Positions 3,361 to 58,186 of a stretch of DNA of 64,000 bases are shown here, in pieces. A program made the position numbers and the translations under genes. Positions within the stretch are counted from its first letter, which is position 1. Every line of letters starts with the position of its first letter. Origin of the DNA: Podarcis tiliguerta (lineage: Eukaryota); assembly GCA_965153285.1 (NCBI GenBank), contig OZ229111.1, one strand, 5' to 3'. The notes under the pieces are model-generated. The model made no database searches. It was not told the DNA's origin and was given only the letters and a program-made list of their open reading frames with translations.

Positions 3361-4200
3361 CTATTTCATATTAGCAGGCCTGAGCCACACGTGTATCAAC
3401 ACTGTAAATTCTTCCACTGAGTCCTGGCCTTTTCTCATCTGTTACATTTAATTGTTTGAGAGAATTAATTTAACACTTCAAGAGAGGGGGAAATTAAGCA
3501 TTTCTTTAAAAATAAAATAAAAAATAAAATATCCAAATATGAGGGGCATTATCACTGGACATATTATGAAGCCGATGTCAAAACAAACACATTTCTAGTT
3601 AGAAATCTTGACATGTAATTCAGCCAAAACAAAACAAAATCCGGTTTGAATGATTGCTAAATTTTAGAAAACTGTTAGTAGTCCTGATGAGATTGAATGG
3701 CAGTGTAAATATTAATGCACAAGCAATTGTAGTATAAACACTTGCTAGTTTACTATAGGTCACATTGCTAGTTGTATGTGTGTGTGCTGGAAATGTAATT
3801 TGCCTTACTTTTTATATTGTTAGGGGTGATTTCAGATGTGGCCGAAACCCCTGATGTTGTTATGGTTAGCATTTGAGTATTTAGGATCCGTCACTGTCTA
3901 AACCGCAAATAGAAGGCCATTTTCTTCAGATTTGAAATAAAGCCATTGATTTACAGAGATGGTGCCTGGATAATGATGTCATTTAAAATCTGAGGCAAAT
4001 CTGGTTATAGATCCAGACTGACTTCCCTAAAAATTCTTTTGTTTTCAACCAGAAGGTTTTAGTTCAGACTGACTAGCTATATGAATAATGATCAATTTAT
4101 ATTTTCAGAAATCATGCTCTCTTTTTTTCCTCCTTCCCAGTTGGCAAGCCAGACACATAAAGGACACTGGTGGCAATTTATCAAAATACTGGGCCTTTTA

Positions 4201-4241
<41 letters not shown>

Positions 4242-4288
4242 GGTTTTGGTGTCCTCGGGTGTCTTCCCGTGTAAAAGTTGGGGTGTCT

Positions 4289-4330
4289 AGGCGACGTTTC
4301 GACGAGGTCTCACTCGTCATCTTCAGGCTG
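4289..4330 (-). ncRNA. Mirror copy of the hammerhead motif on the minus strand
   Basis: gacgtttcgacgaggtctcactcgtcatcttcag (4293-4326) is the reverse complement of 5115-5148. Confidence 0.7.
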
Positions 4331-5110
4331 GTGCTTTCGGCTTCTTGTTACTGGAACAGAGCAGGATCTCAGTGTTTGAGTTCCTATAAATACTGTTGAG
4401 GAGGTGTGGTGTATAGCCTCCAATGTTCTGGGCAGAGAGGAGGTTCCCAGGCTAGTGTGCCTTTTCTTCTTTTGTTCCTTAATTACTTGAGGGATATCTT
4501 GAGTGATTTCTTGAGTGATTTCCTGAATCCCACTTAGGTGGGTCATTAGGTGTGGATTAGTTGCTAGAGCCTTCGTGTCTTGAACTCTTGAACTTTGTGA
4601 AGAGTTTTTCTGAGAAGATGGCTGTACTGCACTTGGTTGTGCTCTGGCTTGGCTTCGTGTATAGGGGCGAGCTGTGGTTTTGTGGCCTGTGCCAGCCAGA
4701 TCTGTGTAGGGATTGCAGGGGGGTGCAGCATCTACACAGATCTGGCTGGCACAGGCCACAAAACCACAGCTCGCCCCTATACACGAAGCCAAGCCAGAGC
4801 ACAACCAAGTGCAGTACAGCCATCTTCTCAGAAAAACTCTTCACAAAGTTCAAGAGTTCAAGACACGAAGGCTCTAGCAACTAATCCACACCTAATGACC
4901 CACCTAAGTGGGATTCAGGAAATCACTCAAGAAATCACTCAAGATATCCCTCAAGTAATTAAGGAACAAAAGAAGAAAAGGCACACTAGCCTGGGAACCT
5001 CCTCTCTGCCCAGAACATTGGAGGCTATACACCACACCTCCTCAACAGTATTTATAGGAACTCAAACACTGAGATCCTGCTCTGTTCCAGTAACAAGAAG
5101 CCGAAAGCAC

Positions 5111-5152
5111 CAGCCTGAAGATGACGAGTGAGACCTCGTCGAAACGTCGCCT
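5111..5152 (+). ncRNA. Minimal type I hammerhead ribozyme motif (PLE-type)
   Basis: CTGAAGA core 5115-5121, extra T, stem II GACGAG/CTCGTC (5123-5128/5135-5140), GAAA 5141-5144, then C-G-T-C (loopless stem III, GUC triplet, predicted cut after 5148). Stem I is weak (2 clear base pairs). Confidence 0.7.
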
Positions 5153-5873
5153 AGACACCCCAACTTTTACACGGGAAGACACCCGAGGACACCAAAACCT
5201 GCATTCCTGTACCCGTGAAAATCTACGAAAGCATATATATATATATATATATATATATAAAGAGATTAAAAACAGACTGAAAAGTTCTATACCGGTTTCA
5301 TCTAGCACAACGCTTAAGATATCAGGGGAACTGGGGGCCAGTTAAATAGATTCCAGGTGAATATTCAGTACCTGACTATTTGAGTAATGCTCTGTTCACA
5401 CTGTCAGTTAGCAATAGTAGGTTATAATCCAGAACCAGAGTGGAAGATGTTTATCATGGTGTATCATGAGGGAAACAAGCCAAGCACCTGACACCCCCCT
5501 CCCCAATTCTCATGCTTCCTTCTTTCTTCCAGTGCAGCCACAATGAGAGGTTCAGAAGATTTCACTACTGTTTTTAATTTACTGTGTTTCACCATGTTAT
5601 CTAAATCTGACAAACTGTGTTTAAACTGTGTTTTTAAAAAACAAGACAATTTCAAACCATGGTTTAGGAAGCTGACTTTATTCAACCATAGTTAAGATTA
5701 ACCACAGTTTAGGGTTCAATTGTAATGCTAAATTGTGGATAACTGGATTGGAAGTAAAACCTTCCAATTTCCTCCTCGAGGCCACAGCAAAGGGAAAGAG
5801 GGGGAGAAAGTGTATGAACTGCAGGGGGAGGCTAGGCATGCTCACTTCTCACATAATAAACCATGGTTTATCA

Positions 5874-30659: not shown

Positions 30660-31529
30660 TGTTGTTGTTGTTTAGTTGTTTAGTCGTGTCCGACTCTTTG
30701 TGACCCCATGGACCAGAGCACGCCAGGCACTTCTGTCTTTCACTGCCTCCCACAGTTTGGTCAAACTCATGTTCGTACATTCAAGAACACTGTCCAACCA
30801 TCTCTTCCTCTGTCGTCCCCTTCTCCTTGTGCCTTCAATCTTTCCCAACATCAGGGTCTTTTCCAGGGAGTCTTCTCTTCTCATGAGGTGGCCAAAGTAT
30901 TGGAGCCTCAGCTTCACCATCTGTCCTTCCAGTGAGCACTCAGGGCTGATTTCCTTCAGAATGGATAGGTTTGATCTTCTTGCAGTCCATGGGACTCTCA
31001 AGAGTCTCCTCCAGCACCATAATTCAAAAGCATCAATTCTTCGGCGATCAGCCTTCTTTATGGTCCAGCTCTCACTTCCATACATCACTACTGGGAAAAC
31101 CATGGCTTTAACTATGCGGACCTTTGTCGGCAAGGTGATGTCTCTGCTTTTCAAGATGCTGTTTAGGTTTGTCATTTCTGTTCTCCCAAGAAGCAGGCGT
31201 CTTTTAATTTCGTGAGGAACCGGCAAGCCACTCCAGTATCCCTGCCAAGAAAACTCCATGGACAAAGACAACTGGCATATAAAAGCATGGGACTAGACGT
31301 CTCAAAAGGCCACCTCCTCCAGGAGTTATTTCCCCTTCTATTTGCCATGGAGTTTTCTTGGCAGGGATACTGCAGTGGCTTGCCAGTTGCTACTCCAGGT
31401 GGATCACGTTTGGTCAAACCTCTCCACTATGACCTGTCTGTCTTGGGTGGCCCTGCACAGCATAGCTTATAGCTTCTCTGAGTTATTCAAGCCCCTTCGC
31501 CACGGCAAGGCAATGATCCATAAAGGAGG
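30660..31529 (-). mobile_element. Internally deleted/rearranged Bov-B (RTE) insertion
   Basis: 3' ORF end at 30660-31215 (HEIKRRLLLG...VTKSRTRLNN, (CAA)n tail) plus a putative 5'UTR at 31345-31529 and an inverted piece of it. 10-bp TSD TCTCTCAGGT (30650-30659, 31530-31539). Confidence 0.85.

Positions 31530-52760: not shown

Positions 52761-52805
<45 letters not shown>
52761..52805. repeat. (TA)n microsatellite
   Basis: Direct read. Other simple repeats: (AAAC)n ~15459-15490, (TA)n ~33328-33347, poly-A ~46147-46168, CT-rich ~57597-57677, (AAAT)n ~61449-61503. Confidence 0.95.
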
Positions 52806-52813
<8 letters not shown>

Positions 52814-55773: not shown

Positions 55774-56130
55774 AAGGGACGCGGGTGGCGCTGTGGGTAA
55801 AACCTCAGCGCCTAGGACTTGCCGATCATATGGTCGGTGGTTCGAATCCCCGCGGCGGGGTGCGCTCCCGTCGTTCGGTCCCAGCGCCTGCCAACCTAGC
55901 AGTTCGAAAGCACCTCCAGGTGCAAGTAGATAAATAGGGACCGCTTACCAGCGGGAAGGTAAACGCGTTCCGTGTGCTGCGCTGGCTTGCCAGATGCAGC
56001 TTGTCATGCTGGCCACGTGACCCGGAAGTGTCTGCGGACAGCGCTGGCTCCCGGCCTTTAGAGTGAGATGAGCGCACAACCCTAGAGTCTGGCAAGACTG
56101 GCCCGTGCGGGCAGGGGTACCTTTACCTTT
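55774..56130 (+). mobile_element. Sauria SINE, distinct young subfamily
   Basis: CpG-rich, with diagnostic AAAACCTCAGCG and GGCCCGTGCGGGCAGGGGTA. Perfect 13-bp TSD TAGCAGTTCTTCG. Confidence 0.92.
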
Positions 56131-57825: not shown

Positions 57826-58186
57826 AGGTATAGGTAAAGGGACCCCTGACCGTTAGGTCCAGTCGTGACCGACTCTGGGGTTGTGGCGCTCATCTCGCTT
57901 TATTGGCCGAGGGAGCTGGTGTACAGCTTCTGGGTCATGTGGCCACCATGACTAAGCCGCTTCTGGTGAACCAGAGCAGTGCATGGAAACGCCGTTTACC
58001 TTCCTGCCAGAGCGGTACCTACCGTATTTATCTACTTGCACTTTGACGTGCTTTCGAACTGCTAGGTTGGCAGGAGCTTGGACCGAGCAATGGGAGCTCA
58101 CCCCATCGTGGGGATTTGAACTGCCGACCTTCTGATCAGCAAGTCCTAGGCTCTGTGGTTTAACCCACAGCACCACCGGGCATCCA
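57826..58186 (-). mobile_element. Sauria SINE
   Basis: Reverse complement of the consensus seen elsewhere in the window. Perfect 12-bp TSD GCAGAAAACATA. Confidence 0.92.

What the first reader, a model, noticed from the sequence alone, without database searches (positions are those of the whole stretch)
4237..5233. Near-kilobase fold-back Penelope-like element with identical arms, inserted in a (TA)n tract
Seen: two 473-bp arms that read as exact reverse complements, a 22-nt spacer, a 29-nt extension on one arm only, and (TA)n on both flanks. Known: PLE insertions often have an inverted pseudo-LTR at the 5' end and a short 3' tail, and some PLE lineages favour microsatellites. Inference: this is a very recent or gene-conversion-homogenised insertion with no RT/endonuclease. 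Transcription from either strand gives a ~470-bp dsRNA hairpin (possible endo-siRNA/ADAR substrate able to silence the parent family), and the DNA could extrude a cruciform. It may represent a non-autonomous fold-back PLE family.
Basis: partly seen in the sequence, partly recalled or inferred. Interest (0 to 1): 0.8.

Follow-up and report, generated by a model that had tools for sequence, protein, structure and literature searches.

The report
Head-to-head truncated Penelope retrotransposon insertion
This is a young, dead-on-arrival insertion of a Penelope-like (Poseidon-type) retrotransposon: two truncated copies joined head to head in a (TA)n microsatellite, a layout already described for this class, so it is ordinary.

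Summary
Arms 4237-4709 and 4732-5204 are 473 nt and 100% complementary, with a 22-nt centre, a 29-nt one-sided tail (5205-5233) and (TA)n on both flanks.

The Penelope-like reading also holds.
- Each arm has a minimal hammerhead core with an ATG inside it.
- The arms end at +84 and +113 of that ORF. These match the two internal reverse-transcription start sites that define the "tail" of Anolis Poseidon_Ac.
- The 37 codons after the ATG are 68% identical to the start of protein P0002. By eye, P0002 aligns with the Poseidon_Ac N-terminal domain.
- Public runs show a very high-copy, 3'-biased family that ends in (TA)n in three species.

It is not a "fold-back family". Other copies of the family read through the 22-nt centre and continue upstream, and other head-to-head junctions break at different points.

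The insertion looks young. It differs from the family majority at one site, and both arms share that difference.

Not tested: reads spanning the locus, an empty site in other individuals, and transcription of this locus. Contigs break in the (TA)n tracts. The scan has noted the same layout on other DNA of this genome; one follow-up called it well described. Interest is low.

The parts
4206..4238 (.). Left part of the (TA)n target microsatellite, (TA)16.5
   Evidence: Tandem Repeats Finder; sequence
4237..4732 (-). Left PLE copy, sense on the minus strand, 5'-truncated. It covers about -411 to +84 relative to the element's ATG and has no tail. Its outermost AT is shared with the TA tract (2-nt microhomology).
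   Evidence: Family contigs align on the minus strand through 4664-4732 and go on upstream (tables 7 and 8, X15 record 10).
4710..4731 (-). The 22-nt 'spacer'. It is not filler: it is the extra 5' element sequence of the left copy.
   Evidence: table 7: 13 (X1), 18 (X5) and 1 (X15) contigs and 34 reads (X23) match up to 4732, then diverge with one shared continuation.
4732..5233 (+). Right PLE copy, sense on the plus strand, 5'-truncated. It covers -389 to +113 and includes the tail. Base C4732 is shared by both copies (1-nt overlap).
5205..5233 (+). The 29-nt 'tail', +85 to +113 of the ORF, present at this end only
   Evidence: The Poseidon_Ac tail spans about nt 85-119, between two RT start sites (PMC11167929).
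5115..5148 (+). Minimal hammerhead motif: CUGAAGA, extra U, 6-bp helix II with G10.1-C11.1, GAAA, palindromic ACGU with no loop 3, cleavage site after C5148
   Evidence: 2 matches in the window, 0 in 100 shuffles. The features match the min-HHR of PMC4209133. No Rfam hit.
4293..4326 (-). Mirror copy of the hammerhead motif in the left copy
5121..5231 (+). First 37 codons of the PLE ORF. The ATG overlaps the hammerhead core, as in Poseidon_Ac.
   Evidence: 68% identical to residues 1-37 of P0002. P0002 aligns by eye with Poseidon_Ac_1p.
4237..4320 (-). First 28 codons of the same ORF in the left copy
5233..5259 (.). Right part of the (TA)n target microsatellite, (AT)13.5

Best explanation
One retrotransposition event of a very abundant, recently active Poseidon-type Penelope-like element hit a (TA)n microsatellite. 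It left two 5'-truncated copies of the element's 3' end joined head to head. Neither copy has the RT or the GIY-YIG endonuclease, so the insertion was dead on arrival. Most likely mechanism (inferred): the element's endonuclease cut both strands of the AT-rich target and both 3'-OH ends primed reverse transcription. The left end started at the inner RT start site (+84, giving no tail) and the right end at the outer one (+113, giving a tail). The two cDNAs, 496 and 502 nt long, were then joined at their 3' ends with 1 nt of overlap (C4732), each serving as template for the other's second strand. The 22-nt 'spacer' is simply the extra length of the left copy. The arms are identical because the event is recent and both copies came from the same template variant. 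Shown: anatomy, family abundance, (TA)n targeting across the family, spacer identity, matching end positions. Inferred: double-ended priming and the joining step.
For: Anatomy. Spacer is element sequence: family contigs and reads run through it from the left arm only and continue with one consensus (tables 7, 8). Family: summed word depth of 1.7e5-6.8e5 on the arms against about 80 on the flanks, rising toward the 3' end. Many copies end at 5204 directly followed by (AT)n in organisms A, B and F (tables 2, 7). PLE identity: min-HHR with the ATG inside it as in Poseidon_Ac, where the unit ends ...CTGAGG and the next copy starts ATG...GAAACGTC. Ends at +84 and +113 against a PAc tail of about 85-119. 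The 37-codon ORF start is 68% identical to the P0002 N-terminus (pairwise E 1e-13; library-wide E 4.2e-4). By eye, P0002 is about 47/110 identical, without gaps, to the Poseidon_Ac_1p N-terminal domain. Known architecture: an inverted 5'-truncated copy adjacent to the unit, a 30-40 bp tail at one end, microsatellite bias (PMC8557442). Mechanism: PAc protein cleaves and extends both top and bottom strands in AT-rich DNA, and starts RT at two internal sites that bound the tail (PMC11167929). The two outer junctions differ, and each sits at one of those two sites. Single event: both arms share G4567/C4874, while about 99.9% of family depth in X1 has A/T there (table 3). Youth: 1 difference in 473 from the organism-A majority. 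If the insertion predated the A/B split (flank divergence 0.88%), 4.2 arm-to-arm differences would be expected, P(0)=0.016.
Against: No read or contig spanning flank-arm-centre-arm-flank was obtained, because contigs break in both TA tracts. The link to Poseidon_Ac rests partly on a by-eye alignment. Two independent cDNAs ending within 22 nt of each other is not predicted by simple double-ended priming. Of 11 other head-to-head junctions seen, 3 are also within 27 nt of symmetry, which hints at a coupled or snap-back step. Rfam hammerhead models do not score the motif, and helix I has only about 2 bp by inspection.
Confidence: 0.8

Rival explanations
1. Same single PLE insertion, but made by snap-back. 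One cDNA folded back on itself near its 3' end, leaving a 22-nt loop, and was copied back. This would give a perfect palindrome by construction.
For: Arms are exactly equal with a small loop. The spacer can form a 4-bp TGCA/TGCA mini-hairpin. Three of 11 other head-to-head junctions of the family are within 27 nt of symmetry. Other notes in this genome list more small-loop fold-backs (unchecked).
Against: Copying back along the same cDNA should give mirror-image outer ends. Here one end stops at +84 and the other at +113, each a canonical RT start site next to the target (TA)n. Most other junctions are asymmetric by 80-408 nt. Almost no terminal complementarity is available to prime at 4709/4732 (sequence).
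Confidence: 0.15
2. Assembly artefact: a fold-back chimeric long read, or a mis-join, turned a single truncated PLE copy into a palindrome.
For: PLE tandem and inverted structures are known to trouble assemblies (PMC8557442). No spanning read was obtained. Perfect identity is what an artefact would give.
Against: A fold-back read would retrace the left flank in reverse complement. Here the right flank is different, single-copy sequence, and both flanks are found in independent runs of two species (tables 2, 8). The two ends are asymmetric in the biologically expected way (+84 against +113). The centre is element sequence with a 1-nt overlap. Head-to-head junctions of the same family occur in short-read contigs of two species (table 5). 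The locus's rare allele (C4874) is present in X1 at about 327 word depth, roughly four single-copy equivalents (table 3).
Confidence: 0.05
3. An older insertion whose arms are kept identical by intrachromosomal gene conversion between palindrome arms.
For: Gene conversion between palindrome arms is well known (general knowledge). Presence or absence in sister species could not be read.
Against: The arms are also 472/473 identical to the present majority sequence of the family in organism A, and they differ from the organism-B majority at five mirrored sites (table 3). Conversion between arms would not keep them close to the family consensus.
Confidence: 0.06
4. Two independent insertions of the same family, in opposite orientation, into one (TA)n hot spot.
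For: The family targets (TA)n widely (table 7).
Against: No TA remnant lies between the two 5' ends. The two truncation points are only 22 nt apart. Both copies share a variant carried by about 0.1% of family depth (table 3).
Confidence: 0.03
5. A member of a distinct non-autonomous fold-back family, or a Foldback/MITE-type DNA transposon with long terminal inverted repeats.
For: Long inverted arms; no coding capacity.
Against: Other copies of the family are not palindromic at this point: they read through the centre and continue upstream. Depth rises toward one end, as for 5'-truncated retroelements. The ends are asymmetric. Other inverted junctions have different break points, each at about single-copy depth.
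Confidence: 0.03

Closest known systems
Poseidon_Ac (PAc), Penelope/Poseidon-clade PLE of Anolis carolinensis (Arkhipova 2006; Frangieh et al. 2024, PMC11167929)
   Same: The hammerhead core lies immediately before and across the ATG, with GAAACGTC about 20 nt into the ORF. Insertion ends lie at about +84 and +113-119 and bound a roughly 30-nt tail. The target is AT-rich. Copy number is high and copies are near-identical. N-terminal domain motifs (LYGE..FQ.TR..EKL, FL..CRD...IP) are shared through P0002.
   Different: A different family. Helix II and most of the first 37 codons differ. The distance from the nearest upstream in-frame stop to the ATG is 243 nt here, if frame 1 is the ORF end, against 126 nt in PAc. 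This copy lacks the whole RT-EN body. No formal alignment could be run.
Generic PLE insertion architecture: pLTR, inverted 5'-truncated partner, one-sided tail (Evgen'ev and Arkhipova 2005; Craig et al. 2021, PMC8557442)
   Same: An inverted 5'-truncated copy abutting the unit, a tail at one end only, 5' truncation, microsatellite (TA)n bias.
   Different: Here there is no full-length unit at all, only the two truncated ends. The result is a clean 473-bp perfect palindrome.
L1 twin priming (Ostertag and Kazazian 2001; own knowledge)
   Same: Both 3'-OH ends of a staggered break prime cDNA synthesis, and the two cDNAs are joined by microhomology, giving an inverted segment.
   Different: In twin priming the two cDNAs cover different parts of one RNA, which gives an inversion with no duplication. 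Here both cover the same 3' region, which gives an inverted duplication and implies two templates or template positions.
Rearranged Penelope copies with long inverted repeats that yield siRNAs in transformed Drosophila melanogaster (PMC3681739)
   Same: Inverted PLE copies able to form dsRNA; siRNAs map to the inverted regions.
   Different: No small-RNA or locus-specific transcription evidence here. The host is a vertebrate.

Membership tests
Penelope-like element (Penelope/Poseidon clade) | [quoted passage not shown] | tested here: inconclusive
   Absent from this copy, as expected for a 5'-truncated one (Pfam empty). The parent's RT and EN could not be retrieved (look-up of encoding contigs closed). 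Only the first 37 codons are present. They are 68% identical to the P0002 N-terminus, which aligns by eye with the Poseidon_Ac_1p N-terminal domain.
Penelope-like element (Penelope/Poseidon clade) | Minimal type-I hammerhead motif in the pLTR, at the pLTR-ORF junction | tested here: met
   CUGAAGA, extra U, 6-bp helix II, GAAA, palindromic ACGU without loop 3, ATG inside the core. This matches the min-HHR description and the PAc layout. Catalysis was not tested. Helix I has about 2 bp. There is no Rfam hit.
Penelope-like element (Penelope/Poseidon clade) | [quoted passage not shown] | tested here: met
   A 29-nt tail at +85 to +113 on the right end only; the left end stops at +84. The PAc tail is at about 85-119. 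Tail-less ends followed by (AT)n are common in the family (table 7).
Penelope-like element (Penelope/Poseidon clade) | 5' truncation with partial tandem and/or inverted adjacent copies | tested here: met
   Head-to-head copies here. Other head-to-head junctions and one head-to-tail junction of the family appear in public contigs (tables 5, 5c).
Penelope-like element (Penelope/Poseidon clade) | AT-rich or microsatellite target preference | tested here: met
   (TA)n on both sides here and at family ends in three organisms (table 7).
Foldback / MITE-type DNA transposon | Symmetric terminal inverted repeats reaching both element ends, fixed-length TSD, whole unit repeated in the genome | tested here: not met
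   The ends are asymmetric (tail on one side). Family copies continue past the centre. The centre junction is not shared by the 13-18 family contigs that reach it.
Fold-back assembly artefact | Sequence beyond the hairpin retraces the first flank in reverse complement; no independent support | tested here: not met
   The flanks differ from each other and are single-copy in runs of two species. Direct spanning reads were not available, so this is not fully excluded.
Hairpin-RNA (endo-siRNA) locus | Transcription through both arms, and 21-23 nt small RNAs mapping to them | not testable with these tools
   The RNA run laid (X23) is from another organism. Its reads carry other alleles and leave the flanks at zero depth. 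No small-RNA data were available.

The most novel reading that the evidence does not exclude
Near-symmetric head-to-head PLE insertions such as this one (cDNAs of 496 and 502 nt, each begun at one of the two canonical start sites) may record synchronous, coupled reverse transcription by a dimeric PLE ribonucleoprotein acting on both ends of one double-strand break. The resulting perfect palindromes could then act as hairpin-RNA sources that feed back on a still-active family in a vertebrate.
Probability: 0.12. Interest if true: 0.5.

Novelty: new member of a known kind. Interest (0 to 1): 0.2.

Why it matters
This is a textbook-clean example of how Penelope-like elements integrate. Both outer junctions sit at the two internal RT start sites that were mapped biochemically for an Anolis element, and the centre shows how the two cDNAs were joined. 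Insertions like this are natural records that could be counted genome-wide to test double-ended target-primed reverse transcription. In practice, a 473-bp perfect palindrome is a likely site of assembly trouble, replication instability and, if transcribed, dsRNA. It adds no new kind of element or mechanism.

Tried and rejected
- Rfam at gathering and at E<=10 gave no hammerhead hit. It gave only generic miRNA-hairpin matches on the palindrome centre, which I take as artefacts of any perfect hairpin.
- Pfam on the three sense frames of the arm and on other window ORFs gave nothing.
- A word search with the 140-codon open sense frame gave nothing. That frame is improbably open (P about 0.0024), but family variants show no third-codon bias, so I do not claim it is coding.
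- In the big HMMER search, P0001 (830 aa) was a repetitive false positive. P0002 was a true relative.
- P0002 follow-ups were all empty: PDB, Atlas, cluster members and a word search.
- The metagenome scan for the 34-nt hammerhead gave 0 hits. The scan with P0002 gave four loci that share only the word DLYGEETF and are unrelated.
- A formal alignment of the arm or of P0002 with Poseidon_Ac was left out, because that sequence exists only as paper text without a reference id.
- The search of earlier findings by sequence was blank.
- Presence or absence in sister species, and the junctions to the flanks, could not be read because contigs end in the TA tracts.

Full report
**1. Observation**

The sequence at 4237-5233 is as described.
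- The repeat finder reports arms 4237-4709 and 4732-5204: 473 nt, 100% complementary, 22 nt apart. A string comparison confirms exact reverse complementarity.
- The right arm is followed by 29 nt (5205-5233) that the left arm lacks.
- (TA)16.5 lies at 4206-4238 and (AT)13.5 at 5233-5259.
- The outermost AT of each arm cannot be told apart from the TA tract.
- No other copy of the arm lies in the window, and no other long close inverted repeat does either.
- As RNA, the 997 nt fold into one hairpin of -1002.6 kcal/mol, z = -93.

**2. What the arms are**

Each arm carries CTGAAGA-T-GACGAG-TGAGAC-CTCGTC-GAAA-CGTC, at 5115-5148 on the plus strand and 4293-4326 on the minus strand. A loose descriptor for it matches only these two places in 64 kb, and matched in none of 100 shuffles.

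The motif has the features listed for the minimal hammerheads of Penelope-like elements (PMC4209133):
- an extra nucleotide between A9 and G10.1;
- a long helix II closed by G10.1-C11.1 (folded);
- a palindromic 15.1-16.1 stretch (ACGU) with no loop 3, which implies that it works as a dimer.

Rfam models do not score it. By inspection helix I has only about 2 bp. I therefore call it a motif, not a proven ribozyme.

An ATG (5121) lies inside the core. In Poseidon_Ac of Anolis carolinensis the arrangement is the same. The unit ends ...CTGAGG and the next tandem copy begins ATG..., with GAAACGTC about 20 nt into the ORF (GenBank file in PMC11167929; text).

**3. The ends match known reverse-transcription start sites**

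Relative to the ATG, the arms end at +84 and the tail at +113. Frangieh et al. showed that the PAc protein starts reverse transcription at two adjacent internal sites. The roughly 34-nt genomic tail, about nt 85-119, is the stretch between them. The one-sided 29-nt extension here is that tail.

The RNA around it can pair UUUU-A-CACGGG (about +45 to +56) with CCCGUGAAAA in the tail. This encloses an AC-rich loop that holds the +84 site. The fold is not statistically distinctive.

**4. Protein-level link**

- The 37 codons after the ATG were searched against 1.84 billion representatives. One true hit came back: P0002, 189 aa, from an unnamed Logan contig.
- P0002 aligns residue 1-37 to 1-37 at 68% identity, pairwise E 1e-13. 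The other hit is a repetitive false positive.
- Read against the Poseidon_Ac_1p translation printed, P0002 aligns without gaps over about 110 residues with about 47 identities. Shared blocks include LYGE..FQ.TR..EKL, FL..CRD...IP, KTP and LL.LH.
- That last step is by eye.
- The parent's RT and endonuclease could not be reached.

**5. The family in public runs**

- Word depth is about 80 (X1, organism A) and about 73 (X5, organism B) on both flanks. On the arms it is 1.7e5 to 8.1e5, rising toward the element's 3' end. This fits a very abundant, mostly 5'-truncated retroelement. Summed depth is not a copy number.
- Many family contigs and reads match from the left arm through the spacer up to 4732, then continue with one shared sequence: 13 contigs in X1, 18 in X5, 1 in X15 and 34 reads in X23. 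X15 record 10 matches 4664-4732 on the minus strand with no differences. The spacer is therefore element sequence. The left copy reaches about -411 and the right copy -389, and they overlap by one base (C4732).
- Many copies end at 5204 followed directly by (AT)n in organisms A, B and F. Tail-less ends in (TA)n are therefore a property of the family.
- Joints at about single-copy depth link left-arm to right-arm positions at other break points. These are other head-to-head junctions, with offsets of 2 to 408 nt. One joint is head to tail. Their short sides (21-29 nt) make each one individually weak.
- Together these points reject a dedicated "fold-back family". Each fold-back is made anew at insertion.

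**6. Age and single origin**

- In X1, all family depth at 4567 reads A, and 99.9% at the mirror site 4874 reads T. Both arms here have G/C (table 3).
- The two arms thus share a rare variant and otherwise equal the organism-A majority (472/473). The organism-B majority differs at five mirrored sites.
- Flank divergence between the window and organism B is 9/1023 = 0.88%. If the insertion predated that split and no conversion occurred, 4.2 arm-to-arm differences would be expected, P(0) = 0.016.
- The insertion is therefore probably younger than the A/B split and came from one template variant.

**7. Mechanism**

*Inferred here:*
- The left target end primed at +84, with a 2-nt AT microhomology.
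- The right target end primed at +113.
- The cDNAs grew to 496 and 502 nt.
- Their 3' ends were joined with a 1-nt overlap, and each cDNA then templated the other's second strand.

This is like L1 twin priming (own knowledge), except that both cDNAs copy the same region.

The main alternative is snap-back self-copying of one cDNA. It explains the near-equal lengths, but it predicts mirror-image outer ends, which are not seen.

The near-symmetry remains partly unexplained. Four of the 12 junctions known to me, counting this one, are within 27 nt of symmetry.

**8. Artefact rival**

I could not get spanning reads. Contigs stop at 4194 and resume at 5273 in both X1 and X5 (table 8).

Against an artefact:
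- The right flank is not the mirror of the left.
- Both flanks are single-copy in independent runs.
- The two ends are asymmetric in the way the biology predicts.
- Short-read contigs of two species contain head-to-head junctions of the family.
- The locus's rare allele is present in X1 at about 327 word depth.

I put the artefact at about 5%.

**9. Function**

- No RT or endonuclease is present, so the insert cannot move by itself.
- The RNA reads on the arms (X23, organism F) come from other family members. None of 15 reads has G at 4567, several other sites differ, and the flanks have no depth.
- Those reads are mainly oriented with the first mate antisense to the element, which in most stranded libraries means sense RNA (tables 2, 3). 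Whether this library is stranded is not on record. They show that the family is transcribed in a relative, not that this locus is.
- A hairpin-RNA role is possible and has precedent: siRNAs map to inverted Penelope regions in transformed D. melanogaster (PMC3681739). It is untested here.
- Inside such a duplex the hammerhead could not fold.

**10. Comparison and verdict**

The architecture is the one described for PLEs: "an inverted 5'-truncated copy ... immediately adjacent", a 30-40 bp tail at one end, and a microsatellite bias (PMC8557442). The scan has noted the same layout at other places in this genome. One follow-up (s1-827643) called it a well-described arrangement. A nearby BovB note gave a lead that the host is a squamate, which I did not test.

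This is a new copy, perhaps from an undescribed family, of a known kind. Its interest is low, apart from its value as a clean record of PLE integration.

Noticed in passing
window 52761-52806: An uninterrupted (TA)23 microsatellite, the same kind of target as the PLE site, is unoccupied.
   Followed up: no
window 55784-55939 and 58022-58177: A 156-nt inverted repeat, 85% complementary, 2082 nt apart. Probably two copies of another repeat in opposite orientation.
   Followed up: no
window 5617-5758: A moderately repeated stretch just right of the insertion. Summed word depth reaches about 1279 against about 75 nearby. It is also hit by RNA reads of organism F, with the first mate on the minus strand only (tables 2, 7).
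   Followed up: no
window 5619 and 5635: Contigs of both X1 and X5 carry TTTAA after 5619 and A after 5635, which the window lacks. This is either individual variation or small assembly indels in a low-complexity stretch (table 4).
   Followed up: no
window 4313-4732 (minus strand; mirrored at 4733-5131 on the plus strand): One sense frame of the arm stays open for 140 codons and stops at a TGA inside hammerhead helix II, overlapping the next ATG. By composition P is about 0.0024. It has no homologue, and family variants show no third-codon bias. A second frame ends 243 nt before the ATG and has an IWL motif, like the Poseidon_Ac C-terminus.
   Followed up: partly
window 30672-31271: Long ORFs on both strands (199 and 179 aa) with no Pfam hit and no inverted repeat.
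   Followed up: partly
window 4482-4526 and 4915-4959: A 12-nt tandem repeat (3.8 copies) inside each arm, belonging to the element's pLTR region.
   Followed up: no
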